Of a stretch of 64,000 nucleotides of DNA, positions 1-59,168 are shown piece after piece. The stretch spans positions 145,767-209,766 of IMG/VR virus record IMGVR_UViG_3300010938_000950. One strand, written 5' to 3'. Numbering within the stretch: the first letter of the stretch is position 1; every line of letters starts with the position of its first letter. A program made the position numbers and the translations under genes. The notes beneath the pieces are model-generated. The model searched no databases and was not told the origin of the DNA. It saw only the letters and a list, made by a program, of their open reading frames with translations.

Positions 1-102
1 GCGCCACTACGTACACGAGAGAGGAGCGCCCGCTCCCATTCACGGCCAGCCCAGGGCCAGAGTCGTCCCCACCGCATCCACCCCAACGCAGGAGCCACCG
101 CC

Positions 103-744
103 ATGGATCTCGCCAACATCATCGCGCTCGTCTCGTCCGCTCACGTCGATCCCACCACCGCGCCCGAAGTGAACGTGGACCCCGAGGTGACCGAGACGGT
201 CATCGGCCGCAATCTCCCCAAGCCGGAGCGCGGCAGCAAGAAGCAGGCCAGCAACCAGGCCGCTCCCATTCACAGCAAGGCCAGTGCGCCGGGTGTGGCA
301 CTCAACACCGGCGACAAGCTCGACGCCAAGTCCTTCATCCTCGCCATGCGCAACGCTGGCAAGCGGTGGGTCGAGGGCAAGGGCCAGGTCTTCGACAAGA
401 ACCACGAGCGCAACGACCAGATCCAGGCCATCGCCTCGTACACCGGGTACGACAATGCCCGAGACTTCGGCAGCCAGCAGCAGGCGGCCATGGCCCAGGC
501 GCAGCGCGAGCTGCGAGGCGGTGTCACCCCTGGTCCGACCAGGGAGGAGAAGCGGGCTGCCGAGCGCAGCATGTCGGGCTACGTGGCAGGCATGCCGCTC
601 CCGGCTCAGAAGCTCCTCGCCAATCTCAGGGCCAGGGAGCAAGCGGCGGCCGAGGCGATGATCGACGCCAAGACCCCGGAGGAGAAGGCTGCGCACAAGC
701 AGCTCCTCGACACCATCCGTAAGGCCATCGACGAGCTGGTCTGA
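103..744 (+). CDS. Hypothetical protein
   Basis: 213-aa ORF, GGAG SD, GC3-rich codons, followed by a terminator; contains the 11-mer in frame (APIH). Confidence 0.8.
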   Translation: MDLANIIALVSSAHVDPTTAPEVNVDPEVTETVIGRNLPKPERGSKKQASNQAAPIHSKASAPGVALNTGDKLDAKSFILAMRNAGKRWVEGKGQVFDKNHERNDQIQAIASYTGYDNARDFGSQQQAAMAQAQRELRGGVTPGPTREEKRAAERSMSGYVAGMPLPAQKLLANLRAREQAAAEAMIDAKTPEEKAAHKQLLDTIRKAIDELV

Positions 745-788
745 CGGACACGCCCGCAAGGGTAACTACATAGGCTCACATCCCGAAG

Positions 789-831
789 GGCTCACACCTG
801 GCGGGGTGTGGGCCTTTCGCTTTTTCTTTTT
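789..831 (+). terminator. Intrinsic terminator
   Basis: GGCTCACACC/GGTGTGGGCC hairpin followed by TTTCGCTTTTTCTTTTT, 45 nt after the stop of 103..744. Confidence 0.75.
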
Positions 832-885
832 CGCGATGTACATCCCTAAAGGGATACCCACGTTGTGGGTGTAGGGAAAAGTGGT

Positions 886-908
886 TGGCCCGCCCTTTGC
901 AGGGTGCA
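886..908 (+). promoter_or_regulatory. sigma54 (-24/-12) promoter with GGGTGCA tail
   Basis: TGGCCCGCCCTTTGCA-GGGTGCA; GG-N10-GC spacing. Confidence 0.7.
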
Positions 909-1148
909 ATGCATGTGCCACGGCCACGCGCCCATATGCGAGAGAAGGCCGCCTCCCATTCACTGCCAGTCGAGTCCGAAAGGCGCAGCAACGGACGAAC
1001 GGCAGCAAGGCACACAAGCCAGCGCGTAAGGCGCAAGTCGCTGTCCGATGCTGGGCGCCCAATCACGGCAGCAAGGCTATATGCTAGGGCTTACAGCCCA
1101 CGTCGTGAATCGGCGCCTCCCATTCACTGCCTACCCACGAGGTTGAGC

Positions 1149-1319
1149 ATGACGGCGAACGAAGCGTACGAACGCGGCAAGGCGGACGCAAGGCGCGACA
1201 AGGCGCCCATCTTCCGCTCGACCAGGCACGGAATCGTCCCCACGGTGGACGATGACATGTCGGACAACTGGTCCCAAGAGGATCGGTTCCACTACCTGCA
1301 AGGGTACGACGAGGGCTGA
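1149..1319 (+). CDS. Hypothetical protein
   Basis: Short ORF (MTANEAYERG...) bracketed by 11-mers at 1117 and 1323. Confidence 0.65.
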   Translation: MTANEAYERGKADARRDKAPIFRSTRHGIVPTVDDDMSDNWSQEDRFHYLQGYDEG

Positions 1320-1452
1320 GCCCTCCCATTCACGACTCACCGGCCACGAAGTCTGCGGCACCCCAACGGCAGCATGTGCATAGCACGGGGCCAACGAGCC
1401 CAAGTCGCTGGGGTGCCGCTCTCCCATTCACCACCTGCCGAAGAGGGTAGGC

Positions 1453-1713
1453 ATGAAGCCAGTCGATACCAACAAGCTGCCCGACCTGATGCCGCGAGTA
1501 GCGCGCATCCTGAGTGTCCAGGGCACCACCATCCAGGATGTGGTGGATGAGCTGCGCAACACCGACTTGTCGGAGGCCAGCATCTACTACACCATCAAGG
1601 GCGCGGCCATGTGCTACCCGCACGTCAAGGCTGCGCTGGAAGAGGCGAGCATCCAAGCGGCCCTGGGCACGTCCCTGCCCGACACGGAACGCGAGCCTCC
1701 CATTCACGACTAG
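1453..1713 (+). CDS. Hypothetical protein
   Basis: 86-aa ORF after the 11-mer at 1421. Confidence 0.75.
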   Translation: MKPVDTNKLPDLMPRVARILSVQGTTIQDVVDELRNTDLSEASIYYTIKGAAMCYPHVKAALEEASIQAALGTSLPDTEREPPIHD

Positions 1714-1759
1714 CCGACCGCAACGAACGTCACCGCAACGCAAACGAAGGAGCATCATC

Positions 1760-1945
1760 ATGAAGAACGTCGATTTCTCGGTCTCGGGCGACACCCTCGT
1801 CATCAAGGTCAACCTCAAGGCGCCGACCACCACGTCCGCCTCGGGCAAGTCGGAGGTCATCGCCTCCACGGAGGGGAACGTCAGCATCCCCGGTCACCCC
1901 GAGATCAAGCTCGGGCTCAACTGCTACACGGCCAAGAAGAAGTAA
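1760..1945 (+). CDS. Small conserved protein (SGKS/T..ASTEGNV family), paralogue of 12253..12435
   Basis: MKNVDFSVSGDTLVIKVNL...SGKSEVIASTEGNVSIPG...KLGLN; AAGGAG SD. Confidence 0.8.
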   Translation: MKNVDFSVSGDTLVIKVNLKAPTTTSASGKSEVIASTEGNVSIPGHPEIKLGLNCYTAKKK

Positions 1946-2148
1946 CTCTCTTCTTGCCACGGCGTGAGTGCTCCGCCCCGTGCGATCCCGAGGCCAGTGG
2001 GTCTCAAAAGGGACACGGGGCAGAGCGCTCGATTCTCTTAGCCCTGCGCATGGGCTAAGCCTTTGCACGAAGTGCTGCGGCACCCGCAAGGGGTGCAGCC
2101 TTGTGAGGGCGGGGAGACATGACTCTCCCTAATAGTGCGCAGTGTTCT

Positions 2149-2230
2149 CGCCAGTGTCACTGAAAAGCGTGCGGGGCTGCGCACGGCCTTCCAAGGTTGT
2201 GACACAAGGGTTCGACTCCCTGACTGGCGA
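2149..2230 (+). ncRNA. tRNA-Gly(TCC)-derived tRNA-like element with expanded anticodon loop and D-region insertion
   Basis: Acceptor CGCCAGT/ACTGGCG, T loop TTCGACT, anticodon arm ACGGC-CTTCCAAG-GTTGT (8-nt loop), no encoded CCA. Confidence 0.6.
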
Positions 2231-2270
2231 CTAAGCTTCTCCCATTCATAACCATCGCAGGGAGAATATC

Positions 2271-2447
2271 ATGCGCTCCATCATCGAAGTGCGCTCATGT
2301 AGCAAGCGCTCGTACGCAAACGAGAATGCGGCTCGCATGGCGCTCATGGAGTGTCGTTCTCGGGGGCGGTGTGAGAACCGCTACTACCAGTGTGCCCACT
2401 GCGGTACCTGGCATCTGACCAGTCAGCCCTTCCGCAAGGTTGCCTGA
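2271..2447 (+). CDS. Small Zn-binding phage protein (C..K.SY...YQC.HCG.WHLTS)
   Basis: 58-codon ORF below the track cutoff, GGAG SD, between 11-mers at 2239 and 2448. Confidence 0.7.
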   Translation: MRSIIEVRSCSKRSYANENAARMALMECRSRGRCENRYYQCAHCGTWHLTSQPFRKVA

Positions 2448-2479
2448 CTCCCATTCACCACCAACCCAAGGAGCAAGTC

Positions 2480-2737
2480 ATGCGCAAGCCTCTCGATCTC
2501 GCCGATACGTACGCACCCCTCTCGTACGAGGATGACGAGCCCACCATCAAGACGCACGTGCCCGACTTCTTCCCCAAGGTCATCGTGGACGAAGATGCGT
2601 CGGATGACGAGCCCACGCTGCCCAGCATGCGCAATCCTCTCTACGAGGAGAAGCGCTATCCCGGTGTGGGCCTGGCGCTCGTCCTGGTCACCGGCGCTCT
2701 CTTCTGGGGAGCGGTCGCATGGCTCGTCTTTCGCTGA
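2480..2737 (+). CDS. Hypothetical protein with C-terminal TM helix
   Basis: AAGGAG SD; acidic N-terminus and hydrophobic tail. Confidence 0.7.
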   Translation: MRKPLDLADTYAPLSYEDDEPTIKTHVPDFFPKVIVDEDASDDEPTLPSMRNPLYEEKRYPGVGLALVLVTGALFWGAVAWLVFR

Positions 2738-2899
2738 TTGTCCTCCTGGTGGGCGGTTGTGCGAGGAGCCTACCGCCCGAGGACTACAGCATCACCATCA
2801 CGTCCCACGTGTGCTCCGATGCAGGGGTCTGTGGGACAGTCACCGAAACGCTTCCTCCCATTCACGGCCAACCATCGACGAAAGGTGCGAGGTGATGAC

Positions 2900-3775
2900 A
2901 TGAACATGATCGACCTGATCGACCACATGACCGGCCCGATGGAAGTGCAGTTCACGGAAGCGCCCTTCTCGGACGGCATGGTGGATCCGTTCGCTCCCTG
3001 CGAGGACTCCCCCGAACGCACGGCGGCTCTCCTCCGCATGTGCCCCAACGAGACGGATCGTGAGGAGCCGTCTCCCCTCAACTTCGGCCAGGACGGTGGA
3101 CGCTACATGTCCAGCGTCTTCGAGGAGATGCTCAAGCGGGGCTGGTAAGCCCTGCAAAGGAAGGTGACATGGGTGTAGGCAAGAAGGCCACGGGTCAACA
3201 GCCCTGGTCCAAGTGGTGTGTGGAGCGTCATCAAAAGACGTGCAAGCGCACCTTGAACGCCATGGAGAAGCGCTACGAAACTCGCGTTCGCCGTCAAGGC
3301 AAGCGTGAGTGTCAAGAGCGCGACTGACTCACCTAGGCTCGCCTCCTTCGGGATGGCGGGCTTTAGGCGTTGCAAGCATGGCCCATCTGTTGCAGGGTGC
3401 AATGGCAATGCCATTGCCCAGCCCTATGGGCGCAAGGATGCAAACGGTGGGCCAGCGCGAAAACGAACGGCTCCCATTCACCGCTCGTCGAGAGCGAAAG
3501 GCACAACGGAGGCGAACATGGCATACGGACTGTGGGACGTTTCGGGGAAGGTGATCATTCCGGGCACTCGTAAGAGCGCCAGCTTCGGTCCCGTTCGCAT
3601 CGGCGACAGGGATCGCCAGACCGCCAGCAAGCATCTGGCGAAGCTCCTGAACGAGAAGTTCCGGCGGGACTTGAAGGGCGACCATCGGTTCTCCGATCAC
3701 TTCGCCCTGATGAACCTGAAGTGGGATGATGTGGTCAAGAAGACCACGCCCGCTTCCGAGCAGGCGGCCGAATGA
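2900..3775 (+). other. Hypothetical ORFs 2900..3148 and 3518..3775
   Basis: SD-preceded starts downstream of 11-mers at 2855 and 3471. Confidence 0.65.
3379..3401 (+). promoter_or_regulatory. sigma54 (-24/-12) promoter with GGGTGCA tail
   Basis: TGGCCCATCTGTTGCA-GGGTGCA; GG-N10-GC. Confidence 0.7.
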
Positions 3776-3964
3776 AACTTCTCAGGGGGAATGTCATCAC
3801 TCTTGATGACATCTACCGTCTCACTACCACCAAGCCCCTGATGGCTCTCCTCTGGTTGAGTCTCGGGGCACTGGTAGGAATCATCCTACACGGCTGCATC
3901 GGCTGATACCAAGGCTCGCCCTCCCATTCACGGGACGGCGGGCTTTAGGTGTCAGGAGGCCACG

Positions 3965-4192
3965 ATGAGCAACACACCGACGGCAGAGCAAGTAACCGCT
4001 GGCATTCGTATGGCAGCGGCCGTGGCGGAAGCCATCCGTGACTTGGGCAGCGTGCCCAGCGGCCATCTGTACGCTCGACTCATGGAATACATGAGTCTGG
4101 AGACGTACAACAAGATCATCACCGTTCTCAAGAATGCCAATCTGGTGGAGGAGAGTAACCATCTCCTCACCTGGGTCGGCCCCAAGGAGTGA
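3965..4192 (+). CDS. Small winged-HTH-like protein
   Basis: AGGAGG SD; helical pattern ending NLVEESNHLLTWVG (wing-like). Confidence 0.6.
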   Translation: MSNTPTAEQVTAGIRMAAAVAEAIRDLGSVPSGHLYARLMEYMSLETYNKIITVLKNANLVEESNHLLTWVGPKE

Positions 4193-4238
4193 CCGGCTCC
4201 CATTCATCGCAGACCACCAACGAAGGTAGGAGGTACGT

Positions 4239-5103
4239 GATGTTCCGCACATACGACGACTGGAAGCTCGACACTCCTCCCGAGTACAACGAGCTTCCGT
4301 ACGGAGAACCACCACATGACGAAGAACAAGCTCCGGCTACTCTTCGTGTGCCTTACAGCCAGCCTGGCATGGGCATGCGAGACAAGCGCTCCGAGTGACT
4401 GCGCAGGCAATCACTGTACCTGGATCATCGCAGGTAGGGAAGCAGGTATCTGTTGCCCTACCTCTGCTCCAGTCTGCGGCACCGCATCCACATGTGGTGA
4501 AGGCCACTGTTGCCCGCTGCAAGTCAGCGAGGAGCTGAGGCCGCTCGACTGAGAGGAATGGGCGACTCTTCGGGGTCGCCCCTTCCGTTCCAAGCTGAGG
4601 CACGCCGTTTGCAGGGTGCATGGAACGTGCCGCGCCCAACGAACGAACCGCTCCCATTCACGGCGCATCGGCGCCAAAACCCGAGGCATCCACACATGAG
4701 CAAGCGAGTCACCATTCACGTGCCCAAGTCCGAGCCTCGCAACCACGTTGCCCGCGAGATGATTCTCAACGGCACTGGCAAGAGCCAGATCATGCGTGAC
4801 CGGCGCAATCGGCGTCCCAAGGATGCCCGGCGCCAGCGCGAGCACTTCGACTACTGAGTCGCTCCCATTCACCGCCAATCGAGGAGAGAAGCCATGAGCA
4901 AGCAGATGTTCCGGGTGGTTCGTGTCACGGTCAAGACGGGCTGCGATCTGGCTCGTGAGGTCATCAAGGCCAATCTGCCCAAGGGCAAGGCCAACGAGAT
5001 CCGCTTCTCCCTGGAGAGCAAGAACGGGGCCGAGGAGTTCAACCCCGATCTGATGGTCTCCTATCTGGTGGAGCCCATGAATCCGACTCAGGTGAGCGCC
5101 TGA
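4239..5103 (+). other. Small hypothetical ORFs 4239..4398, 4696..4857 and 4894..5103
   Basis: Each follows an 11-mer or its variant and has an SD-like sequence. Confidence 0.65.
4598..4620 (+). promoter_or_regulatory. sigma54 (-24/-12) promoter with GGGTGCA tail
   Basis: AGGCACGCCGTTTGCA-GGGTGCA; preceded by the UUCG hairpin GGCGACTC-TTCG-GGGTCGCC (4561-4580). Confidence 0.7.
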
Positions 5104-5679
5104 TAGCTGCTCCCTGGGTGCGACAAGTCAGCAGAGCTGGGGAGGGTGTCATGTAAAGTCGCGCGGTTGGTGACCGCTGCACTCAAGCCGACAACCCGAA
5201 AACCCTAAAGATAGCCAAGCCCAGAAACCGTGGGAGATGAGCGCGATGCTAAGCTCCCATTCATCGTCATCCCAAAGCGGAGAACGAGCCATGCGCAAGG
5301 GTGATACCGAGCGGGAGTGAGTCCCGCCCACCTACAGGTACAGTGGCTGCCTTCCACTTCAATTCAAGGAAGGCTCTACCTGCAAGGACAATACCAATAG
5401 GTGTGTAACGCTGCGTCCCATTCATTGGCATAGCCAAAAGGTGAGGCAGGAGAAGCTACCCACATACTAGCGAAGTGAAAAACCTTCCTAACGATATGTG
5501 GCCGCTGACACTGATAACCACACAACCCCACATAAGGGACCGAGCGTCAGGTTACATGCCAGTAAGATTGAAGGGTCAATCGCAAGATTGGCCCCTCAAT
5601 TTTTACCCCGACCGCACTTACCCCGTTATACCGCAGCATACATTGTGCCCATATAGGCACGTATTGGAGGTACAGGCGC

Positions 5680-5702
5680 AGGCATATTGATTGCAGGGTG
5701 CA
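5680..5702 (+). promoter_or_regulatory. sigma54 (-24/-12) promoter with GGGTGCA tail
   Basis: AGGCATATTGATTGCA-GGGTGCA; GG-N10-GC. Confidence 0.6.
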
Positions 5703-5772
5703 AACAGCGAGCCAATTTATTTTGATGTGGGATAGGCACGCACACTGTAATGTAGATGTAGGGAAAGGTAGT

Positions 5773-5795
5773 TGGCACGGTAATCGCAGGGTGCA
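5773..5795 (+). promoter_or_regulatory. sigma54 (-24/-12) promoter with GGGTGCA tail
   Basis: TGGCACGGTAATCGCA-GGGTGCA; upstream GTAGGGAAARGTRGT shared with the site at 886. Confidence 0.7.
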
Positions 5796-5998
5796 AACGA
5801 TGGGCCAACCACTGCGGCCTGGCGGCCTCCCATTCACGGCAAGCCGGCGGCCGAGGTCGCCGCACCGCAACGCAGACAACGCAAGGTGCATACGAACGGA
5901 TAGCATGTGAGTGGATATGAGCACGGAGGACGGGCTCCCATTCACGGCACGCCAAGCGCCGAAAGCGCAGCGGCTCTCTCAGAAAAGGAAAGACGAAC

Positions 5999-6181
5999 AT
6001 GGGCAAGATCATCGTGGTTCTTCTGGCAACCCTGGCGGCACTCTCGCTTCTGGCCGTCTTCTTCGGTGTGCCCCGACTCTCATCCACGGCCTTCAACGTG
6101 GGCACGTTCAACGTGTCCTGGTGGCTGGTGTGCGGTGGTGTGCTCGGGTACGGCATCTACCGCATCGTCAAGGGGAAGTGA
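5999..6181 (+). CDS. Small two-TM membrane protein
   Basis: Two hydrophobic segments, 60 aa. Confidence 0.7.
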   Translation: MGKIIVVLLATLAALSLLAVFFGVPRLSSTAFNVGTFNVSWWLVCGGVLGYGIYRIVKGK

Positions 6182-6993
6182 CCAGGGCTCCCATTCATCG
6201 CAATAACTTCCCGAGGTGGGGCGGTTGAGGGATACTGACTCCCGCCCCATAACAATCCTATAACTTGACCTGGGAAGTTCTCGTCAGCATACCTGTCAAA
6301 AGCTGAAGGTGTACTGCCAGCCGGGTGACATGACTCACTCGCGGTAATTGCGACCAAAGACTAGGAACAATACAGGCTGGGTAGCAGCTTCGGTTGTCCA
6401 ACTGTATGGTCTAAGGTATAGGCTGATCTCCACCGATTGGGCGGGGTAGGAGACAGGGCTGGTATGCTGACGAGAGCCTCCCATTCACGGCGCAAAGATT
6501 CGGAATTGCGAACCGGATCTCGACAAAGCGTAGGGGGATCTATAGGGGGTATAGCAGATTCTTATCTGACAGGAGCCTACGGGTCAACGAGCCCCGTGCC
6601 AAGAAAACGAACACATACGCTGCCCACGTATAGGGGCTAATCCCGAAGTAACGTAATAGTAGGGAGTCTCAGTGTATGTAAGCAACCGTAAGGTTCGGTA
6701 GGAGTACTTGGTCAATCCCGTGGGTTCCTGCCAGGAAAGAATCGCTCCCATTCATGGGAAGCTGAGCGCAATTGACGAGCCGGAGGTCAAGGTTATGGAC
6801 GAGTTGCCGGAGACCAAACCCGAGAGCATGAGCCAGGACGAGTGGAATGTTGTTGTGGCCGTGCGTCACACCCGGCATGACAACAGACTCGGTGTTCCCA
6901 GGAATTGGAAAGAGTATTGCAGGAAACTGGAATACTGTCTCTTCCTAGCGGACGTGTGAAACTCCCATTCACGACCAAGCGGAGGGCAAGGTC

Positions 6994-7722
6994 ATGGCGA
7001 ACAAGAACAAGATCGAATTGGGTGACGTGGTGAGCCTGGGCTGGGATGACGGCTATCACACGGCCACGGTCTCTCAGGTTCACAAGGACGGGACGGTGGA
7101 TCTCTTCCGTCCCTACACGGCCACGGCTGACTTCTCATGTGCAGGGCGAGAGGAGGGATCTTCCTCGGTCATCTGCTACGTGGGAATCGAAGAAGTCAGG
7201 GGAGTCAATCCCGACAGGCTCAAGCTCTTGCGCAAAGGTAAAGAGCTGAGGTAAGCAGAGGTTCCCATTCATGGGATGGTGTGTGGGGTGGATGTTAGAA
7301 AGGGCGGATGGCCCAAGTCTATCCCCACACAAGCACGCTGAGCTAGTGCTGGACATGTATTGGCCGCCAAGGTACAGTGGTATCTTGGATATAGGGTTCG
7401 ACTCCCTATCGTGTCTCCGGGAGGTTCGCCTCCCATTCACAACCGACAAGGAGCGAATGACATGGACATCTTCGAGATTCTCTCCAAGGACGAACGTGTC
7501 ATTGTCTACTCCTCCCAAGAGGAACGGACACTCATCACCTGGAATCAATCCCTCACACTCCAATACTGGCGCCCTGTTGTCAGGAGGTTTGAGAGTGATT
7601 ATCCCAAGGGACACTTCGATCCCAACGACTGGGAAGAGGTGAATGTGCGCACACTCTCGAATGAGCCCAAGGACTACAAGGCTGCACGAGAAGCAGCCAT
7701 CAGGTGGTACACCGGGTCCTAG
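6994..7722 (+). other. Hypothetical ORFs 6994..7254 (SH3-like) and 7462..7722
   Basis: SD-preceded, downstream of 11-mers at 6962 and 7430. Confidence 0.7.
7351..7417 (+). ncRNA. D-armless tRNA-like element
   Basis: Acceptor GGACATG/CGTGTCT, T arm ATAGGG-TTCGACT-CCCTAT, 9-bp hairpin CCAAGGTAC/GTATCTTGG with 4-nt loop in place of the anticodon arm. Confidence 0.6.
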
Positions 7723-7757
7723 CTCCCATTCACGGTCAATCGAAAGCGGAGGATGCG

Positions 7758-7991
7758 ATGGGCTATCTGAACGAGAACGGGCTGGTCAACGGCAACATTC
7801 CAGCAGGCAAGCCTTGTCCCTGGTGGGGCGGATGTAGCATGAAGGTGGAGCGCTGTCCATCGGAGAAGAATCCCAAGCCAGTGGACTACAGTTGTGCCCT
7901 GGCTCGACTCAACAGCACCATCGACTCCAGCAAGAAAGAGGGCAAGCGGTTGCCTTTGCTGGAGAAGGTCCGGGACAACCTGGGAAAGTAA
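7758..7991 (+). CDS. Cys4 protein, paralogue of 24537..24749
   Basis: NGLVNGNIPAGKPCP..C..CP..YSC motif. Confidence 0.7.
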   Translation: MGYLNENGLVNGNIPAGKPCPWWGGCSMKVERCPSEKNPKPVDYSCALARLNSTIDSSKKEGKRLPLLEKVRDNLGK

Positions 7992-8188
7992 TCCTTGGGA
8001 GCAACTTCTAAGAGCAAGCGAGAGCGTTGGAACGAGGTGGTCAAGGAGACGGGCAAGTGTCCCTTCTGTCCACCTCACAACGGAGAGAACGCAAAGAAGC
8101 GTCCTCGGTCTGACAAGTACAAGAGCAAGCGCAAGGGGCGATAGGGCGCGAGGCTCCCATTCACGGCGAGCCGGCAGCGGAGGGCGAC

Positions 8189-10540
8189 ATGGCGAACGTA
8201 CAAGTGACGCTGACTCAGAAAGAGCTGGAGGAGATTGTCTGCCAGCATCGGATTCCCCTCTGGCTGGAGCATCGGTATCTCTGCCATCCCGAGCGAGAGT
8301 GTGAGGATGGGTGTCAGGTTCACGCTGACCTGAACCGACTCCACAAGTACCAAGATGGTCAAGGGTGTGACCCGGCCTATGGTGGTGAAAGGACCAAGTG
8401 AAGATGCGTGCATGCACACACAAGAGGCGAGAGCTTTGCACCGAAGCTGATGGGTGCTACTGGCTTCGGTGTTTGCATTGCAAGGCTCGCGGTCCCAAGA
8501 AGCATAGCGCCACGCTGGCAATCAAGGCCGCCAAGAACAACATGCGAGAGCGCTGATGGCAAGCTGGCAACTGGAAAAAGATCCTGTCAGGTTGTGGAAC
8601 CTGTTGGCGACATGTCTCTCCTACGGCCACACCATTCCCTACTACTACAGGGATAAGCCGCAAACCTCCTTCCCTCTCAACAATCACGAGCACAACTATT
8701 CCGATAGTTCTTGTGCTCCGTATCTGCTGGAGGATATCCAGCATGCTCTCTTCGATGAGGGGATGCCGGAGGTGAGGCTGGTCTTGTGGGGACGGTCTCA
8801 TGGTCCCATCACAGACACCGTGACCTTCACCTTCAACAAGCAAGGTTTGGTCCAAGCCCTGATCTACTACAACGACGACTAAAAGTCGGCGGCTCCCATT
8901 CACCGCAACCAAGCATCGAAGCCCAACGGAGGAACGAATCATGAGCGAGCAAAAGAATCAGGCGAGCAAGTCGCCTGCAAAAGAGCGCAAGATGACTCCC
9001 AAGGGATTCCTTGCCAAGACTCAGACCAAGGCCGCCAACTCGGCCCTTGCCTTCATCACCCAGTACCGTGAGTATCTGACCACGGGAGAGGTGGCAGACA
9101 GGACCAGTCCCATCATCGCCAAGCTGGATGCTGGCGAGCTTCTGCCGACTCCTGCTCTCCGGGAGATTCAGAATGCCGTGATGACTCACATCATCAAGGC
9201 AGACGAGAAGAAGCTGGAAGAGAGCCTGACGGCTCCTGCCAATGGTGGAGGGACTCGCAAGAACTGGCGAGCCACCATCTACGATGCGGCTGGCAACGTC
9301 ATGACTCGGACCAAGGAAAGCGGGGAAGTGGAGGATCTCATCAAGGGGTTCGATCTCTCCTCGGATGCCGACCGCTGGTGTGACCGGCGACTCTTCGAGG
9401 GGACGCATGGTTGGTATGCCATCGTGGAGCATACCAGCATGAAGGTCTCCACCCGAATCGAGCGAGGGGATGCCATCGCCCGGATTCTCAAGAAGCCCAA
9501 GGGGCCGACGGTCCAGGTCAAGGGCAAGAGCACCAAGACCCTGGGCTTCGGAGTCAAGGCCAAGCAAACCCGAGTCACCTTCTCGGGAAGCTGAGAGCCA
9601 ATGGGGAGCGGGGCCAAACACTCCGCTCCCATTCACAACCAATCGAGGACGATGAGCATGACACCGTTCGAGCAAGCGGTTGCCTCCCTGGGCGACACAC
9701 CCGAGTCAGTCACGGAAGCACTCAGGGCCAAGGGCATCAAGGGCTATCGGCGCCTGGCCTCTTCATGCCCGATTGCCAAGTACCTGAATGCATGTGGGTT
9801 CAAGATCGTCACGGTCGCTACCCACGCTCACAATTACCGCCATCCTATGGATGAGTATGCGGAGCAGGCAATCTCTCTGAATAAGGGAGTTAGGGAGTGG
9901 ATCATCGGATTCGATGATGGCAAGTACCCGGAGTTTTACCAGGACGCATGACCATCTCAGCCGAGGATGAGTTTCTGATTCAGGCCACTGGTCCAGGAAA
10001 GGAAGATCGTTCCTGGTCCCGGAGCACCCTGGCAGTAGCTCAACACATCGCAGACCAGGCCATCACCAAACTTGGGTATGCGTATGCAGAAGTGCGCAAC
10101 CAGTTTGGTGGGCATCTGAGTGACCCTCTCTACAAGGTGGAGAAGATTGCTCGGCCTCCGGGAGAACCAACCAACGAGATGCGGCTCTCCATGAAGAGAG
10201 CTGGCATTGACCCGGACGAGTGGCTACAGAAAGCACGAGCCCCTCAATCACACGCTGCCACTCAGCAATTGATTGCTTTGTTGGCAAAGAGGCGATAAGC
10301 CTCCCATTCACAGAATGCCCATTGCAGGGCATGCGGCAAGCAACGAACGAAAGCGAGACAACGAACATGAACGAGCAGCAGACCTTCCAGAGCCCGACCC
10401 GCCTCTTCCTCCTCCGATGCCATGCGGCCTGGGAGAAGTTCGAGAACGTGGTTCTCTTCCCCTTCCGCTGGCTGAGCGCCCGCTTCGGACAGACCCACGT
10501 GTTCGAGGAGCGAGCGGTCCAGCTCCGACTCGTCAAGTAA
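8189..10540 (+). other. Hypothetical ORFs 8189..8401, 8556..8882, 8941..9594, 9652..9951, 9948..10298 and 10367..10540
   Basis: Tightly packed + strand ORFs with SD sites, most preceded by the 11-mer. Confidence 0.7.
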
Positions 10541-10702
10541 GCAAGCCGAGCGGCTCCCATTCACCGCTCACCGCAAGCGGCAAGCGACAGCACAATCGAG
10601 CATCGGGCCTTCCCCGGCCCATGAGCTAACAAGCAATAAGGTACACACGAACGCTCTGCTCACTCGTGCTGTCGCAACCCGCACCTAAGACAAGGAAGAG
10701 TC

Positions 10703-11080
10703 ATGGCCAAGTGTTCACGCTGTCAGGGTGAAGGCGAGGAGTTTACCGAAGAAGAGGGCCACCCACGAGGTGGAGTCTACGAGACCTGCTACCACTGTGG
10801 TGGTTCTGGTGAAGTGGACGAAGAGACCGACTTCCACGACCGACTCCATGCGGTTGCTTCCGCTCTGGCTTACCAGAAGGAAAGCGAGTATCGCAAGGCA
10901 TGTGACTCTGACCCGGATGGGGATGGGTACGACTTGTGTGCAGCGGAGAATGGCTACCGTACTTACGACTACTTCCGAGTCCGTGTTTGGGAACGCACGG
11001 CGGACATTGCCCAAGAGCTGGCCGAAAGGCCGAGGGCAGACCAAGAGCTACTGGTGGCCTGGAACGAATACCAGGGCTGA
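10703..11080 (+). CDS. DnaJ-type CxxCxGxG zinc-finger protein
   Basis: CSRCQGEG and CYHCGGSG motifs. Confidence 0.7.
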   Translation: MAKCSRCQGEGEEFTEEEGHPRGGVYETCYHCGGSGEVDEETDFHDRLHAVASALAYQKESEYRKACDSDPDGDGYDLCAAENGYRTYDYFRVRVWERTADIAQELAERPRADQELLVAWNEYQG

Positions 11081-11115
11081 CGGCTCCCATTCACTGCAAA
11101 CCGAAAGGCAAGGCC

Positions 11116-12772: not shown

Positions 12773-12956
12773 CCATAGGGGCTGACCGAAGACGAAGGGG
12801 TGGATGAGCAACCCTCCCGGAATGGCGATAATTGGGTAACGTACTCAAGTAAGCAAAGTTGGTGGCTCCAATCTTCGCATCGGCATAAGCCGACTGCAAC
12901 CATCGGGCAAGGCCGATAGGATCTAACCATTCCTCCCTCTGGTAGATTCTGTCCGA

Positions 12957-13048
12957 GGCCGAAACAAGCATACGACACTATATGGGTTTAGCGGTGAGCC
13001 CTGTAGCTAGTATGCTTGTCTAACAGTGAGGCTGTTACTGACGAGCCC
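12957..13048 (+). ncRNA. Type II hammerhead ribozyme candidate (cleavage after GTC 13020)
   Basis: GAAA at 12961, perfect 10-bp stem III ACAAGCATAC/GTATGCTTGT, GUC triplet, 6-bp stem I TAACAG/CTGTTA, CTGACGA core, short stem II G13045-C12960. Confidence 0.7.
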
Positions 13049-13250
13049 AAGTACCTACACGGGTAGCAGACGAAACCATCTGGCTGGTAACCGGGTGGCT
13101 GATAGTAGGGATACACCAAACGAGATGTAAGTTTGGTCCCTTCTGGTCTATAACAATACCTCACCAGAGAGCGGCTGTTGTCCTACAGGATTGCCAAACT
13201 CTGCTTTGTAATCATAATGCCGGGGTCGCTCCCTGAATTGTCTGTAGGTG

Positions 13251-13319
13251 GCATATCCCAAACTGGATGACCAAGCGACTAGCTATCGCAAGGTGTGGGT
13301 TCGATTCCCACGATATGTA
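13251..13319 (+). ncRNA. Degenerate tRNA-like element (anticodon loop CT-AGC-TA)
   Basis: Acceptor GCATATC/GATATGT, T arm GTGGG-TTCGATT-CCCAC, D-loop-like AACTGGAT without a stem, 4-bp anticodon stem. Confidence 0.6.
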
Positions 13320-13459
13320 CTGAGTTACTTGGCGTGAGTCACTGTGAGTCACAACGCATGTCGGGGTCTCGAATCCTTATGCACCGTGATAGCAGGTTCG
13401 ACCCATGGGAATAACGGCCGGGTAGCTCTCAAGCTCCCATTCATCGCAAGAAGGAAACG

Positions 13460-14327: not shown

Positions 14328-14504
14328 GATGAGCACTCCGAAGACCAAGCGAGTCAATGCTCGCAAGTTCCCCGGCATCGCTGGTGCCCGGCCCGACAAG
14401 GCGGCTTGGCGCAAGGAAGCTGCTCTCAAGCGGCAAGCGGCCTACGCTGCTCTTCCCGAGGAAGAGAAGAAGCGCCGCAATCCCAAGAAGTTCGAGAAGG
14501 CGGC

Positions 14505-14630
14505 ATGAAGCTCTCACTTCGGAAGCAGAGGGGATTCACCCTGACCGAGCTTCTGGTCGGCCTCTTCTGGCTCCTCTTCTGGGGCACTCTCATCGTGGTG
14601 GCCGTTCACTTCATCGCCAAGTTCTGGTGA
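14505..14630 (+). CDS. 41-aa type IV prepilin-like peptide
   Basis: MKLSLRKQRG|FTLTELLVGLFWLLFWGTLIVVAVHFIAKFW: basic leader, G-1, F+1, E+5 and one hydrophobic helix. Confidence 0.75.
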   Translation: MKLSLRKQRGFTLTELLVGLFWLLFWGTLIVVAVHFIAKFW

Positions 14631-14634
14631 TAGA

Positions 14635-20207: not shown

Positions 20208-20210
20208 GTC

Positions 20211-40110: not shown

Positions 40111-40121
40111 GGTAACGTGTC

Positions 40122-42745: not shown

Positions 42746-42748
42746 ATC

Positions 42749-55498: not shown

Positions 55499-55681
55499 AT
55501 TTGAATTTCTATACAAAGAGTACCTAGAATATTCTAGGTTGTTCCATTGGTATCATGGAAGTTCTTTTTCCTTTTTCAAAGGTAAAGCTTCTAAAGTAGA
55601 AGCAGAAAGGTATAGGTATCTTTCTAATTATTACTTTGAAAAAGCTGTAATCAAAGCTCGAAAAATGGTAATGCCTAAGAG

Positions 55682-56191
55682 GTGATCATGTTTAAGTATG
55701 ATCAGAATGTTGAGCGCTACGGAATTAAACTGGTTAACGACCGTGTTATCCGCAAAGAGGCTCAATTTTCAACCTATAAGCATTTTGAATTTCTTTCTAG
55801 ATTAGCTAGGCATCTAATTGCCAACCCTGATCCTACTGTAGTTCCTGTTTATAAATTCGAAGTTCTGGAAGAGGCTCCCGAAGGAAAACTGTGGGGCACG
55901 TTTAGATACGCATATGAAATGATGCGCCTGCCTATGCTTTCACGTGAGGAAAAGAGCGCTATCAATACATTCTTCCAACACAGATATAATATGAATAGGT
56001 CTGAAGACCCCTACTTGCTTCGTGATAAGCGGGAGTTTCCGGAGCTAGCTAAGTTCATGTCGAAAGTTTTCGACGATGATAACTATACCGATCTTCACGA
56101 CGGGAACTTCCTAAAAGATGAAGAAGGGAACTATCGTATCATTGACCTGGAGGGATTCTCTCGTTACCCAGGTGTTGGCCATCTAGAGTAA
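55682..56191 (+). CDS. Minimal protein-kinase-like fold protein
   Basis: V.K, DLHDGNF and IIDLEG motifs. Confidence 0.6.
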   Translation: MIMFKYDQNVERYGIKLVNDRVIRKEAQFSTYKHFEFLSRLARHLIANPDPTVVPVYKFEVLEEAPEGKLWGTFRYAYEMMRLPMLSREEKSAINTFFQHRYNMNRSEDPYLLRDKREFPELAKFMSKVFDDDNYTDLHDGNFLKDEEGNYRIIDLEGFSRYPGVGHLE

Positions 56192-57448
56192 TAAATTATG
56201 AATATCAAAGCTGCGCCCGTAATCAAATTCGGGTATGTAATGCTAGCTATTAATATGGCTCTATCTAGCTACTTCTGGTTGTTTGGTCATGATGAAGATG
56301 ATCGTTTCCATACAGCTTTGTTTATGGGCGGCTCCATGCTCTGGATAATCATGATCTTGGTATGGTATAAAGTTCAAGAAACTGAGGAGTAAAACGTGGA
56401 AGATTGGGCTGAGCTAGATGAAGACAAGTGTGCTTGCCATGGTTGTGGCTGGGCAGAAGTTTCAAAAGATGAATGGGTAGAATGCCCCCTTCACTTCGAA
56501 GGTCAGCTTCATCCTGATACGCAGGCTCTGCTACTGGATGAGCCTGAACGTTTAGTTGAAGAGGAGCGTAAATCACGGCTTCGGTTTCAAATCAGAGAAG
56601 CGCGAGCCAAGATTGTTCTTGCCCAAGAGCAACTTAAAGAAGAGCAGAGCAAGCTAGCTCGTCTTGAACTAGAGCTAATCAATAGGACGCCCACTGTTAA
56701 AGCTATGCGAGCAGTCGTTCCACCCCCGCTTCCTATTCCTTCTGAGCCAAAACCATTTGAGCTTACGGAGACAGATTTTCTATGAGAATCTATGATGCTA
56801 TTGATGCTGCGGCTAAGGCCCTAAAGTCTGGAGCACATCCTAATATTCTAAGGATGGCACTAATGAGTGACGGCTTTCCAGCCTCTAAAGTAGAAGTTAT
56901 TTTGGGATGGGCTAACCAATCCAACAAAGGAAAACAAATGAAAACGATTGAAGAAATGAAGGAACTCTTTCCATGGGAAGAGGGCATGGGAGAAATCAGT
57001 GGTTTCGGGGGAGGCTATGAGGAAGCCTGTCGAAACATGGTTTACTCCGGCCTTGCTTGGCTGGAGACCAAACCCAATGCCGAACTGCGTGCTATTGAGT
57101 ATAAGAATGTCTTTGGTATTCTTACTCCAGACAATGCTGATACTCAGGAATTGGACGATGCGGTGGCGGCTGGGGAACCCGGTTGTTCAGGTGCAATGCA
57201 TCATGCTGCCATGAGTCATGTTATGTTCATTGCTAAGAATGGTTGGAACAAATACGTCTCTGAAATGAAGAAACGCGGTTAATCATGACCAAGAAAGATT
57301 ACATCAAGGCCGCCGAGATTGTTCGACAGGACCACAAGAAGAATGGAGATATCTTCTCCAAACTTATGGAAGAGTCTTTCGTCAAACTTTTCCGACAGGA
57401 TAACCCGCGCTTCGATGAGAAGCGTTTCCGTGAAGCCTGCAAGGGAGC

Positions 57449-57787
57449 ATGAGTATGGATACAATTACGTTTGACGATTTCGTCAAAGCAGACATGCGTG
57501 TAGGTACAATCACCTCTGCGGAGGCTGTGCCCAAGAGCAAGAAGCTTCTCAAACTTTCTGTCTCATTCGGTCCTGAGATTGGTACTCGCACTATTCTTGC
57601 AGGTATTGCCGAAGCCTACAATCCAGAAGGCATTGTTGGACTTCAGATTGTTGCAGTAATCAACCTTCCGCCCCGAGCTATGATGGGTATCGAGTCTCAT
57701 GGTATGCTTCTAGCTGGCAGGTCTGCAACTGGTCAACTCATTCTCGTCTCTCCTAATGGTATTGCCGAGGGAGAGCGAATCGGCTGA
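57449..57787 (+). CDS. Trbp111/CsaA-type OB-fold tRNA-binding protein
   Basis: FDDFVKADMRVGTI...KLLKL...RTILAGI...NLPPRAMMGIESHGMLL. Confidence 0.9.
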   Translation: MSMDTITFDDFVKADMRVGTITSAEAVPKSKKLLKLSVSFGPEIGTRTILAGIAEAYNPEGIVGLQIVAVINLPPRAMMGIESHGMLLAGRSATGQLILVSPNGIAEGERIG

Positions 57788-59168
57788 GAGGCGCGGCCTC
57801 CCATTCACGGGAGGCCGTTGCAAAAGGAAGCGCCCATGATTAGGTTGAGAACCAAAGTAGGAAATGGTAGAGTTTTTACTCTCTACTTCATGGGTAAATG
57901 GGTAACTCTCATCAATGATGGTACCAGAGCTTCTTCTGTTGATGCAGACAACCTGATGATGGCAGGAGCTAACCATCTGGCAGCCGCTACAAAACTCAAG
58001 GAGATTATGGATGACAGAGGAAGATTTGCTGAACAGCTACTTCACAGAGAAAGATATTCCGGGAGTCTCAGCTCAGGAGTTTCAGACGGCAGTGATGGGG
58101 CTAATCGAGAAGGGTCTCATCGAGATGGTGGAAGCGAACGGGATCAAAATCTACCGCCCAACTCTTCTTCTGAAGAAAATCAAAACACATCTGAACTCGG
58201 ATCCCAAAACGCAGAGTTAAATGATGGACAAGAAAGAGTTTGAAGAAAAGCTAATCAAAGACTTTCCTGGCCTCTATGCTGATATGTATGGTGATGCCAG
58301 TAAGACTTGTATGGCCTGGGGAGTAGAAATTGGACCAGGATGGTATGATCTGGTTTATGATCTCTCCGCTAAGTTAAACGCCATTATTCAAACCTTTCCA
58401 AAAGAATACGCCCAGAATTTTAGGTTCTCCCAGATAAAAGAAAAGTTGGGCGGCCTGCGTATTCATATGACAAAAACCTCGCCCGAGATGAGAGAACTTA
58501 TTCATAAGGCCGAGTCTGATAGTTATCATATTTGCCATCGTTGTGGACAACCTGGTAAATTAGTAAAAGCTAGTTGGCTCTATACATCCTGTAAAGAGCA
58601 CGCTAAACAAGAACACAAAAACCAATTCTGAGGAAAAATGAGCAACAAGAATTTGCCCCTGGACGAGCAGCTTTTCACCGCCGAACACTTTGCGCCCCTT
58701 CCAGGAGCAGTGCTTGGCCTACAGTTCAAGGATGTGACGCTGAAGGGAAAGGTTGGGGACTTCGAGTCCGGAACCAAGTTCTCTTATGCGGTCCTCCTGG
58801 GTGATGCGTCTGCCCTGGTCCTGATCGATGAGAAACAGGAGGAACACGCATTCCGCCTGAGTGTGAGTGTGGGTGAGCGCATCGATGCGGCCGAGCTTCA
58901 TGAGCCTCATGATGAGAGCTGTGATTGCGGCCACGATCACTGACAATGAAATGGATTGTTTCTTGGCAAACAGTGGTTCATCATAGTGATGGTACATGGT
59001 TTGAAAAAACTGAAAGGCACCATCACTCAAAAGAGTTTGATGATAAAGAAGAGGCATACCAATTCAGAAATGATTTGAGGAATGCAAGATATGTTGTAAA
59101 TGTTGAGCTTAAAAGAGAAGTATCTTTAGACGATATTTACAATGCAATCGCAGCCAAAAACTAAGACC

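What the first reader, a model, noticed from the sequence alone, without database searches (positions are those of the whole stretch)
33..57808. One-strand, position-graded 11-mer CTCCCATTCAC punctuating the gene cassettes
Seen: 46 exact copies and 6 CAT variants, all on the coding strand, where chance expectation is about 0.015 per strand in 64 kb. 32 exact copies lie in the first 16.2 kb (about one per 500 bp), 13 in the next 32 kb and only one after 48 kb. Most sit just after a stop codon and 15-60 nt before the next SD/ATG, followed by A/C-rich unstructured leaders. Inference: a phage-specific cis signal for early genes. Options are (a) a promoter for a phage or virion RNA polymerase or phage sigma factor, (b) an RNA-level site for antitermination, processing or translational activation, or (c) a polar DNA site (Chi/KOPS-like) for ejection, protection or cassette recombination. 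I do not recognise it as a described motif.
Basis: partly seen in the sequence, partly recalled or inferred. Interest (0 to 1): 0.85.

Follow-up and report, generated by a model that had tools for sequence, protein, structure and literature searches.

The report
Invariant promoter-like 11-mer heading jumbo-phage early genes
An 11-base word, CTCCCATTCAC, sits on one strand in front of dozens of small early genes of an uncultured ~490-kb phage and is letter-for-letter identical in distant relatives, so it is most likely the start signal (promoter) for a still unidentified transcription machinery.

Summary
There are 46 exact copies and 6 CTCCCATTCAT copies, all on the + strand (chance about 0.03), distributed 32/13/1 as described.

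The window is part of a ~490-kb uncultured jumbo phage distantly related to Xanthomonas phage XacN1. The array begins 656 bp left of the window, at an AT-rich divergent region where GC jumps from ~40% to 65%.

- 41 of 52 copies are intergenic, against 21% intergenic DNA.
- The commonest distance to the next ATG is exactly 21 nt.
- The second base after the word is a purine in 88 of 89 sites.
- No copy lies on the other strand in 225 kb of related phage DNA.
- The 11-mer is unchanged in a relative whose orthologous protein is only 40% identical.
- XacN1 has perfect sigma-70 promoters in the same architectural position; this clade has none.

No RNA polymerase or sigma factor was found in the window.

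Rivals are an RNA 5'-end or translation element, and a stoperator- or SAS-like protein site. A Chi/KOPS-like role is disfavoured.

The motif is undescribed. I rate it a new variant of a known kind.

The parts
33..16204 (+). Dense part of the array: 32 exact CTCCCATTCAC and 6 CTCCCATTCAT, about one per gene.
   Evidence: Exact copies start at 33, 263, 953, 1117, 1323, 1421, 1697, 2448, 2855, 3471, 3921, 4651, 4862, 5827, 5935, 6478, 6962, 7430, 7723, 8154, 8893, 9626, 10301, 10554, 11084, 11860, 12140, 12544, 14086, 14723, 15358 and 16194. CAT variants start at 2239, 4197, 5254, 6188, 6745 and 13434. 26 of 42 predicted genes here have a copy within 70 nt upstream.
18704..47708 (+). Sparse part of the array: 13 exact copies, each heading a group of several genes.
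   Evidence: Copies start at 18704, 19489, 21515, 23750, 26910, 28823, 29861, 32967, 34498, 37604, 41574, 44195 and 47698. 8 of 71 genes have a copy within 70 nt upstream. Six of these copies (23750, 26910, 28823, 29861, 37604 at 21 nt; 34498 at 23 nt) are 21-23 nt before an ATG.
57798..57808 (+). Last copy in the window.
   Evidence: The orthologous copy is present in the 340-kb relative (L133:4654).
4862..4896 (+). Example of the minimal cassette junction: stop codon TGA, 4 nt, 11-mer (4862-4872), 21-nt leader with GGAG, ATG (4894).
   Evidence: The orthologue in the 480-kb relative (L002:4281) keeps the 11-mer and the 21-nt length while the leader sequence differs.
263..273 (+). Copy inside gene 2 (103-744), read as Ala-Pro-Ile-His.
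   Evidence: A54, P55 and I56 are at least 90% conserved in 48 homologues, inside an otherwise variable linker that is disordered in the model (pLDDT below 50 for residues 45-66). This points to constraint at the nucleotide level.
953..1116 (+). ORF-less unit that begins with a copy and ends at the next copy.
   Evidence: No ORF. The first ~60 nt are 80-93% identical in many relatives but show no conserved fold.
5827..5934 (+). ORF-less ~100-nt unit between two copies.
   Evidence: Also present in the 340-kb and 480-kb relatives (L001:1160-1272, L002:5344-5445).
886..919 (.). Imperfect palindrome TGGCCCG-N4-TTGCA GGG TGCAA-N-TGCCA, ending 34 nt upstream of copy 953.
   Evidence: The left half fits the sigma-54 -24/-12 consensus. 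It follows the terminator at 784-819.
3379..3413 (.). Same palindrome type, upstream of copy 3471.
4598..4631 (.). Same palindrome type, upstream of copy 4651.
5680..5713 (.). Same palindrome type, upstream of copy 5827.
784..819 (+). Strong intrinsic-terminator-like hairpin (16 pairs, then a T-run) after gene 2. The order is terminator, palindrome, 11-mer, next unit.
   Evidence: The same order follows gene 1 (L005:5252-5279).

Best explanation
CTCCCATTCAY is the core promoter of the early genes of a clade of uncultured jumbo phages. The clade includes the window phage, which is about 490 kb.

I infer that it is read on the non-template strand and directly abuts the transcription start. The word would occupy about -12 to -2. 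The invariant purine two bases after it would be the initiating nucleotide. This gives 5' untranslated regions of about 20 nt that hold only a Shine-Dalgarno sequence.

Nearly every small gene of the first 16 kb has its own copy. Further in, one copy serves an operon of several genes.

It must be either an enzyme or factor delivered with the virion, or a product of the first cassettes, or a host alternative holoenzyme.

Shown: the anatomy, the strand bias, the link to gene starts, and the conservation.
For: 1. There are 52 copies on one strand and none on the other. In 225 kb of related phage sequence there are 238 unique sites on the coding strand and 0 on the other.
2. 41 of 52 copies are intergenic against 20.6% intergenic DNA, p = 4e-19. 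When a copy overlaps the end of the upstream ORF, it still sits 13-23 nt before the next ATG.
3. The second base after the word is a purine in 88 of 89 sites chosen without regard to it, and G in 19 of 22 in a relative found by protein homology only. Nothing upstream is conserved.
4. After genes 1 and 2 the order is strong terminator, then 11-mer, then next gene. A new start signal is needed there.
5. About a third of copies head ORF-less units or lie inside genes, so the word is not purely a translation signal. The copy inside gene 2 is kept as an 'APIH' island in a variable, disordered linker.
6. XacN1's analogous block of small genes carries 13 perfect TTGACA-N17-TATAAT on the coding strand and 0 on the other, mostly 24-30 nt before the ATG (two sit only 6-7 nt before the first ATG), with the same A/C-rich leaders. 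That implies 5' UTRs of about 20-22 nt. The window has no such site.
7. The 11-mer is identical in phages whose orthologues are 40-83% identical. In 30 of 39 orthologous gene pairs the relative keeps a copy, while the upstream flank identity is at random level.
8. Copy density falls in step with synonymous GC, and GC3 drops from 0.82 to 0.39. This fits a temporal early-to-later gradient.
9. Precedent: in Thermus phage P23-45, a conserved motif before pre-early genes proved to be the promoter of a cryptic virion RNA polymerase, and relatives without the enzyme lack the motif (PMC10770324).
Against: - No transcript 5' ends are available, so DNA-level action is inferred.
- No RNA polymerase or sigma factor was found among about 50 window proteins scanned. 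Jumbo phages outside the phiKZ-like and T4-like groups are reported to lack both (PMC7824862; which group XacN1 falls in was not checked). The RsoM2USA paper reports no RNA polymerase gene.
- The word resembles no known promoter class. It lacks the TAnnnT of primary-sigma -10 elements.
- The distance to the ATG peaks at exactly 21 nt (49-58 of about 156 assignable sites). That is sharper than a promoter alone requires and hints at an RNA or translation constraint.
- 11 of 11 positions are invariant over deep divergence. T7-group promoters drift with their polymerases, so this is unusual, although the T4 late promoter is similarly stable (from my own knowledge).
- A sigma-54-like element lies 40-75 nt upstream of the leftmost copies. 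It could be the real promoter there, which would place the 11-mer in the transcript.
Confidence: 0.5

Rival explanations
1. It is an RNA-level element of the leader. The word is transcribed and serves either as a cleavage or 5'-end-defining site that cuts long early transcripts into monocistronic mRNAs, or as a binding site about 32 to 22 nt before the start codon that helps ribosome loading.
For: - The distance to the ATG peaks sharply at 21 nt, and the 21-nt leaders are stereotyped (N-R-C ... YC ... GGAG ... C-ATG).
- Most junctions have no terminator, so read-through transcripts would contain the word.
- Sigma-54-like elements upstream of the leftmost copies could supply the transcripts.
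Against: - The leaders have no conserved structure (mean z -0.1).
- There is no Rfam family match, even at E = 1.
- About a third of copies have no ORF behind them or lie inside ORFs.
- Strong terminators precede some copies, so downstream genes need a fresh start.
- In XacN1 the corresponding position is a promoter.
Confidence: 0.2
2. It is an asymmetric binding site for a monomeric phage (or host) regulator. The regulator acts on passing or initiating RNA polymerase in an orientation-dependent way, for example to shut off or anti-terminate early transcription. This would resemble the stoperators of Cluster A mycobacteriophages, or the unexplained SAS/ESAS elements of Cluster K.
For: - An 11-14-bp asymmetric word, in one orientation tied to the direction of transcription, lies in short intergenic spaces in dozens of copies. 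This is the stoperator pattern (PMC9283540).
- A subset of copies has an imperfect inverted repeat upstream whose left arm is closer to consensus than the right and whose mismatches do not support RNA pairing. ESAS is described in the same terms (PMC3203893).
- The word is restricted to the non-structural, early part of the genome.
Against: - No repressor-like or HTH protein was found in the window.
- The phage looks lytic: it is a jumbo myovirus relative and no integrase was seen.
- Stoperators vary between sites, and neither stoperators nor any other pure roadblock site would be expected to keep a purine at a fixed offset or a 21-nt phase to the ATG.
- SAS contains the Shine-Dalgarno sequence and lies 3-7 bp from the start, which is not the case here.
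- The first copy stands before the very first gene of the block.
Confidence: 0.15
3. It is a DNA site for recombination or cassette shuffling, or another polar DNA process (Chi/KOPS-like, nicking, packaging or ejection).
For: - Gene cassettes bounded by the word differ in presence and order between relatives. For example, window gene 3965-4192 sits elsewhere in the 480-kb relative, and the cassette 1421-1697 is missing in the 340-kb relative.
- The strand polarity is strict, and density is graded from a boundary.
Against: - 79% of copies are intergenic and phased to start codons. DNA-tracking motifs are not expected to be.
- Indels between 11-bp direct repeats are expected by slippage whatever the word's function.
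- The density gradient follows GC3 and gene class, not simply distance. The 9.5 kb to the left has none, although 6 kb of it is + strand genes.
Confidence: 0.05
4. It is a sequence-specific transcription pause or termination signal placed after each gene.
For: - About 24 copies lie 0-10 nt after a stop codon.
- P23-45 has a conserved 26-nt motif at terminators near its left end.
Against: - The distance to the upstream stop has no sharp mode, whereas the distance to the downstream ATG does.
- In long spacers the word more often stays near the next start (12 cases against 8).
- The first copy has no + strand gene upstream.
- A terminator after every early gene would leave the downstream genes without transcripts.
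Confidence: 0.03

Closest known systems
Early promoters of T4-type and XacN1-type phages (host sigma-70 holoenzyme)
   Same: - There are many copies on the coding strand, one before almost every small early ORFan gene.
- The leaders are compact and A/C-rich.
- The promoter-to-ATG spacing is narrow.
- The elements sit in one block next to a divergent region (XacN1).
   Different: The sequence has no -35/-10 hexamers, and the window has no consensus sigma-70 site. It is a single 11-bp block that abuts the presumed start. It shows far less variation than sigma-70 promoters.
Phage-polymerase promoters (T7/T3/SP6 class; P23-45 virion and non-virion RNAP motifs)
   Same: - The block is highly conserved, strand-specific and immediately upstream of an initiating purine.
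- It is clade-specific and absent from relatives that use another strategy (for P23-45).
   Different: No polymerase gene has been identified. The block is 11 bp rather than 17-23 bp. The word does not drift among relatives that have diverged to 40% protein identity.
T4 late promoter TATAAATA (gp55/gp33) and other '-10-only' phage sigma promoters
   Same: It is a single short element, almost invariant within and between related phages (from my own knowledge), with no -35 partner.
   Different: The sequence is unrelated. The genes served here are early, not late. No gp55- or gp33-like protein was found in the window.
SAS/ESAS of Cluster K mycobacteriophages (PMC3203893; function still open in 2025, PMC12699233)
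   Same: - It is an asymmetric short word in one orientation, in front of start codons, restricted to the non-structural part of the genome.
- It is conserved across subclusters in front of unrelated genes.
- A subset has an upstream imperfect inverted repeat with a better left arm and no RNA-pairing support.
   Different: SAS is 13 bp, contains the Shine-Dalgarno core and lies 3-7 bp from the start. Here the word has no SD, lies 21 nt or more away with a separate SD, and about a third of copies have no ORF behind them.
Stoperators of Cluster A mycobacteriophages (L5 gp71)
   Same: They are asymmetric words of about 13 bp, in dozens of copies in short intergenic spaces, with orientation tied to transcription.
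   Different: Those phages are temperate and carry a known repressor. Their sites vary and are not known to be phased to start codons.

Membership tests
Sigma-70 (primary sigma) promoter | TTGACA-like and TATAAT-like hexamers 16-18 bp apart; at the least a TAnnnT -10 element | tested here: not met
   The word contains no such hexamers. Sigma-70-like hits in the window are at shuffle level and not associated with the copies. There are 0 consensus sites, against 13 in the XacN1 early block.
Phage RNA-polymerase promoter (T7-like or cryptic virion RNAP) | Conserved block directly upstream of an initiating purine, on the coding strand only | tested here: met
   The 11-mer is invariant. There is a purine two bases downstream in 88 of 89 sites. 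No copy lies on the other strand.
Phage RNA-polymerase promoter (T7-like or cryptic virion RNAP) | A cognate polymerase gene in the same genome | tested here: inconclusive
   None was found among about 50 window proteins. The other ~425 kb of the genome could not be read with these tools.
Phage RNA-polymerase promoter (T7-like or cryptic virion RNAP) | Primary transcript 5' ends at a fixed offset from the block | not testable with these tools
   No transcript data are available and the phage is uncultured.
Stoperator (Cluster A mycobacteriophage) | Asymmetric word in intergenic spaces with orientation tied to transcription | tested here: met
Stoperator (Cluster A mycobacteriophage) | A cognate immunity repressor and a temperate life style | tested here: inconclusive
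   No repressor or integrase was detected in the window. The rest of the genome was not seen.
SAS/ESAS (Cluster K mycobacteriophage) | The word includes the Shine-Dalgarno core and lies 3-7 bp from the start codon | tested here: not met
   The word has no SD. The modal distance is 21 nt, with a separate GGAG at leader positions 11-15.
SAS/ESAS (Cluster K mycobacteriophage) | One orientation, non-structural region only, and a subset preceded by imperfect inverted repeats | tested here: met
   compared with the description read.
Chi/KOPS-like polar DNA motif | Strand-skewed word spread through the DNA irrespective of gene boundaries | tested here: not met
   79% of copies are intergenic and phased to starts.
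Known RNA family (Rfam) | Match to a curated covariance model | tested here: not met
   Only one tRNA-Glu at 59702 was found. Nothing appears in 1-34000 even at E = 1.
Sigma-54 promoter (for the upstream palindromes, not the 11-mer) | TGGCACG-N4-TTGCW with GG and GC 10 bp apart | tested here: inconclusive
   The left arm fits the full consensus in 58 unique elements. But the element is an imperfect palindrome whose right arm mirrors it, so it may be a protein operator instead. No enhancer-binding ATPase gene was seen.

The most novel reading that the evidence does not exclude
The 11-mer is the promoter of a so far unrecognised transcription enzyme or specificity factor that enters with the virion. 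That would resemble the polymerase hidden in the P23-45 tape measure or in crAss-like virion proteins, here in a jumbo-phage lineage for which no polymerase gene is annotated in the cultured relatives. The matching gradient of synonymous GC would record a timed programme in which the first-expressed genes are tuned to the host's tRNA pool.
Probability: 0.2. Interest if true: 0.85.

Novelty: new variant of a known kind. Interest (0 to 1): 0.62.

Why it matters
If the word is a promoter, it marks a whole clade of 340-500-kb soil and freshwater phages that do not use the host's primary sigma factor for their first genes. Yet no polymerase gene is annotated in their cultured relatives. That points to an undiscovered way of taking over transcription.

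The word also gives a simple handle:
- The early regulon of uncultured phages can be annotated from sequence alone.
- A compact, orthogonal 11-bp promoter with a 20-nt leader could serve as a tool.

If instead it is an RNA or regulator site, it is a second, independent case of the unexplained SAS/ESAS architecture of mycobacteriophages. That would help to crack that open problem.

Tried and rejected
- **Leader hairpins.** By eye, hairpins seemed to start right after the word. Folding all 53 leaders gave a mean z of -0.1 against shuffles, so there is no general structure.
- **Known RNA families.** Rfam gave nothing at gathering score or at E = 1. ARAGORN found only one tRNA.
- **ORF-less units as structured small RNAs.** The alignment of the unit after copy 953 is conserved in sequence but gives no consensus fold (-3.5 kcal).
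- **Same or alternative motif in cultured or more distant relatives.** There is none in 92 kb of XacN1, and none in L134 or L135.
- **Reader protein.** Pfam and PHROGs scans of about 50 window proteins found no polymerase, sigma factor or clear regulator. Sequence searches against the PDB for gene 1 and the 696-aa protein gave nothing. The AlphaFold model of gene 2 (pLDDT 71) had no significant fold match.
- **Host clue.** The scan of 185,579 species genomes found only unrelated longer repeats. No cultured phage holds gene 2 or the SprT-like gene.
- **Metagenome scan.** Most of the 120 hits are unrelated 13-, 14-, 18- or 29-bp tandem satellites that happen to contain the word. Only about 24 loci are phage arrays. 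L003 from the viral scan is such a chance tandem repeat.
- **Resemblance to the sigma-32 -10 element (CCCCATNT).** This comes from memory. No -35-like partner is conserved upstream, so it remains only a lead.
- **First gene model.** A simple longest-ORF gene model was misleading in the GC-rich part and was replaced.

Full report
**Observation.** CTCCCATTCAC occurs 46 times in the window, always on the + strand. Dinucleotide-preserving shuffles give 0.03. Six further copies end in T instead of C (2239, 4197, 5254, 6188, 6745, 13434). Other one-mismatch forms are at chance level: 2 on +, 1 on -.

**Where the window comes from.** The window is the last 64 kb of IMG/VR contig IMGVR_UViG_3300010938_000950. 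The same phage is also on record as a 490,794-bp JGI contig (Ga0063162_1000349). No cultured phage is close at the DNA level.
- The best protein links are a 696-aa protein 41% identical to Xanthomonas jumbo phages XacN1 and Xoo-sp13, and a DUF7275 protein shared with Ralstonia phage RsoM2USA and many large myoviruses.
- All predicted genes in the window are on the + strand. Most are small ORFans.
- The recognisable genes are auxiliary: two RNA ligases, SprT-like/DUF7168, RadC, HNH, endonuclease VII, a metallophosphatase and a phosphoribosyltransferase.

**The array has a sharp left edge outside the window.** One more copy lies at L005:4744, which is 656 bp left of the window. It stands 33 nt before the ATG of the first gene of the block.
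- Immediately to its left is a 490-bp AT-rich divergent region. Beyond that are peptidase genes on the other strand.
- GC jumps from 36-46% to 65% at this point and then decays to about 43% across the window.
- The 9.5 kb to the left holds no copy on either strand, although 6 kb of it is small + strand genes.
- The decay is in synonymous sites. GC3 falls from 0.82 to 0.39 (Spearman -0.79, p = 5e-32) while GC at codon positions 1 and 2 stays at 0.45-0.52.
- Copy number per 4 kb falls in step: 12, 12, 7, 6, 3, 2, 1, 2, 2, 1, 1, 2, 0, 0, 1, 0.

**Relation to genes.** I built a codon-usage gene model, because a plain longest-ORF model fails in the GC-rich part.
- 41 of 52 copies are intergenic against 20.6% intergenic DNA (p = 4e-19).
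- About 24 copies lie 0-10 nt after a stop codon.
- Five of the 'intragenic' copies sit in the last few codons of one gene and 13-23 nt before the next ATG. The word is therefore placed relative to the downstream start.
- The distance from the end of the word to the ATG peaks sharply at exactly 21 nt: 16 of 55 in the window, and 49-58 of about 156 assignable unique sites when relatives are added. A second mode lies at 33-34 nt.
- The 21-nt leaders are stereotyped: N, purine, C, a YC at positions 7-8, GGAG around 11-15, and C before the ATG.
- Nothing upstream of the word is conserved except that the preceding base is rarely A.
- The second base after the word is a purine in 88 of 89 sites from the window and the IMG/VR relatives.
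- The leaders are T-poor and on average unstructured.
- About a third of copies do not precede an ORF. They head ORF-less units of 100-300 nt that end at the next copy (953, 1323, 5254, 5827, 6188) or lie inside genes (263, 11860, 14723, 44195, 47698).

**Conservation.** The same word, on the same strand and in the same kind of place, occurs in several relatives:
- IMG/VR contigs of 480 kb and 340 kb.
- About 24 metagenomic contigs, including one of 498 kb.
- A relative found through protein homology alone, whose gene-2 protein is only 40% identical. It has 18 exact and 4 CAT copies in 11 kb, all +, and the first stands just before gene 1.

In 225 kb of such sequence there are 238 unique sites and none on the other strand. 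Where the window gene has a copy, 30 of 39 orthologues in relatives keep one. Upstream flanks of orthologous sites are at random identity (20-46%), while codon positions 1 and 2 are 74% and 83% identical. Leader length is often kept while its sequence changes, for example at window 4862 against L002:4281.

The copy inside gene 2 is read as Ala-Pro-Ile-His. These residues form a conserved island (at least 90% in 48 homologues) in an otherwise variable linker that the structure model leaves disordered. This indicates selection on the nucleotides.

Caution is needed with raw hits. Most metagenomic hits, and all hits in bacterial genomes, are unrelated tandem satellites or longer repeats that merely contain the word.

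**Comparison with the cultured relative.** XacN1 has no copy of the word in the 92 kb examined.
- Its analogous block of 60-odd small genes (record positions 1-22,500, minus strand) carries 13 perfect TTGACA-N17-TATAAT on the coding strand and none on the other.
- Most of these lie 24-30 nt before the ATG, with A/C-rich leaders; two sit only 6-7 nt before the first ATG. That implies 5' untranslated regions of about 20-22 nt.
- The XacN1 and RsoM2USA papers do not discuss promoters.
- The window has no consensus sigma-70 site. Weaker sigma-70-like hits are at shuffle level.
- The 11-mer therefore occupies the architectural place of an early promoter. If transcription starts at the conserved purine, the resulting 20-nt leader equals that of XacN1.

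**Other context.**
- Strong terminator-like hairpins follow gene 1 (L005:5252-5279) and gene 2 (784-819). After each come an imperfect palindrome and then the next 11-mer.
- The palindrome TGGCAY-N5-TTGCA-N3-TGCAA-N5-RTGCCA accompanies only the leftmost copies. It starts 40-75 nt upstream of them and is conserved in all relatives. Its spacers are not complementary, so it is a DNA site rather than an RNA hairpin.
- Its left arm fits the full sigma-54 consensus and is somewhat better conserved than its right arm.
- Cassettes bounded by the word differ in presence and order between relatives.

**Interpretation.** The most economical reading is a clade-specific core promoter for early genes. Supporting points:
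- strict strand polarity
- placement before starts but also before ORF-less units
- an invariant purine just downstream
- a position after terminators
- replacement of sigma-70 promoters relative to XacN1
- density typical of the early regions of large phages

The P23-45 case shows that such a motif can betray a polymerase hidden in a virion protein.

Against this stand several points:
- There are no transcript data.
- No polymerase or sigma factor is recognisable in the window. Jumbo phages outside the phiKZ-like and T4-like groups are reported to lack both (I did not check which group XacN1 falls in).
- The 21-nt mode is very sharp.
- The word is unusually invariant.
- The sigma-54-like elements may be the true promoters at the left end.

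I therefore give the promoter reading 0.5, an RNA-level leader or processing element 0.2, a stoperator- or SAS-like regulator site 0.15, a recombination or polar DNA site 0.05, and a terminator 0.03.

**Comparison with what is known.** The word matches no promoter class by sequence and is in no phage paper of the library.
- Functionally, it most resembles phage-specific promoters such as the T7 class, the P23-45 motifs, and the T4 late promoter in its invariance.
- Architecturally, the closest described case is the SAS/ESAS pair of Cluster K mycobacteriophages. That is a one-orientation word before starts in the non-structural half, with a subset preceded by imperfect inverted repeats whose left arm is the better one. 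Its function is still open.
- It is not a member of that family. It lacks the Shine-Dalgarno core and sits 21 nt, not 3-7 bp, from the start.
- Stoperators share the asymmetry and orientation rule but belong to temperate phages with a known repressor.

**Verdict.** This is a real, strongly selected, undescribed cis-element of a widespread uncultured jumbo-phage clade. It is best explained as an early promoter with an unknown reader.

Noticed in passing
window 886-919, 3379-3413, 4598-4631, 5680-5713; L005:4590-4625, 4684-4720, 5296-5330, 5367-5400; also L002, L031, L039, L096, L117, L144 and others: A conserved imperfect palindrome, TGGCAY-N5-TTGCA-N3-TGCAA-N5-RTGCCA, starts 40-75 nt upstream of the leftmost 11-mer copies only. 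Its left arm matches the full sigma-54 -24/-12 consensus. The spacers are not complementary, so it looks like a protein or holoenzyme site on DNA. It could be sigma-54-dependent immediate-early promoters or an operator.
   Followed up: partly
window 1-64000 (and L005:4500 onwards): Synonymous GC forms a monotonic gradient: GC3 falls from 0.82 to 0.39 over 64 kb from a sharp boundary, while GC at codon positions 1 and 2 stays flat. The earliest genes may be tuned to a GC-rich host's tRNA pool and later genes to a pool supplemented by phage tRNAs. A mutational or gene-conversion cause is not excluded.
   Followed up: partly
window about 2150-2232, 7315-7420, 13250-13330, 19410-19488, 33975-34060, 34175-34255: Six tRNA-like elements have a GGTTCGAnTCC T-arm and a 7-bp acceptor-like stem, but ARAGORN and Rfam do not call them. 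Several end just before an 11-mer copy. 27 such T-arm words occur in the related phage loci. They may be degenerate tRNA genes or tRNA-like processing signals.
   Followed up: partly
L010 (XacN1, AP018399.1) 1-22500, minus strand: 13 perfect TTGACA-N17-TATAAT promoters, often with an extended TGTG, lie on the coding strand of the small-gene block of XacN1's terminal repeat, and none on the other strand. The published XacN1 paper never uses the word promoter.
   Followed up: yes
window 10301-10345, 19489-19530, 41574-41610: Three copies are followed at once by a near-identical hairpin, AGRATKCCC-loop-GGGMATGCGG (97% identity over 36 nt between the first two). This may be a small sub-family of leader or small-RNA units.
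   Followed up: no
window 964-1025 and orthologues in L002, L039, L043, L063, L096, L116, L117: The ORF-less stretch after copy 953 (...CGAAAGGCGCAGCAACGGACGAACGGCAGCAAG...) is 80-93% identical among relatives. That is better than the neighbouring coding DNA, yet it has no consensus fold.
   Followed up: partly
metagenome loci L014, L016, L033, L038, L055 and others; L003; genome loci L136-L142: The same 11-mer is part of unrelated 13-, 14-, 18- and 29-bp tandem satellites (for example CTCCCATTCACAC repeats) in contigs from a few samples, and of longer repeats in several bacterial and archaeal genomes. These are chance look-alikes that would inflate any naive count.
   Followed up: yes
window 16230-18320: The largest gene of the window encodes a 696-aa protein (phrog_33734) with no Pfam or PDB sequence match. 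It is conserved in XacN1 and Xoo-sp13 (41%) and more distantly in large actinophages and Lactobacillus phage LpeD. It is headed by an 11-mer copy 25 nt upstream. Its function is unknown.
   Followed up: partly
window 1421-1707 against L006:819-933; window 3965-4192 against L002:6432-6673: Whole cassettes (word, leader and gene) are present, absent or relocated between relatives, with the 11-mer at the junctions. The early block evolves by cassette gain, loss and shuffling.
   Followed up: partly
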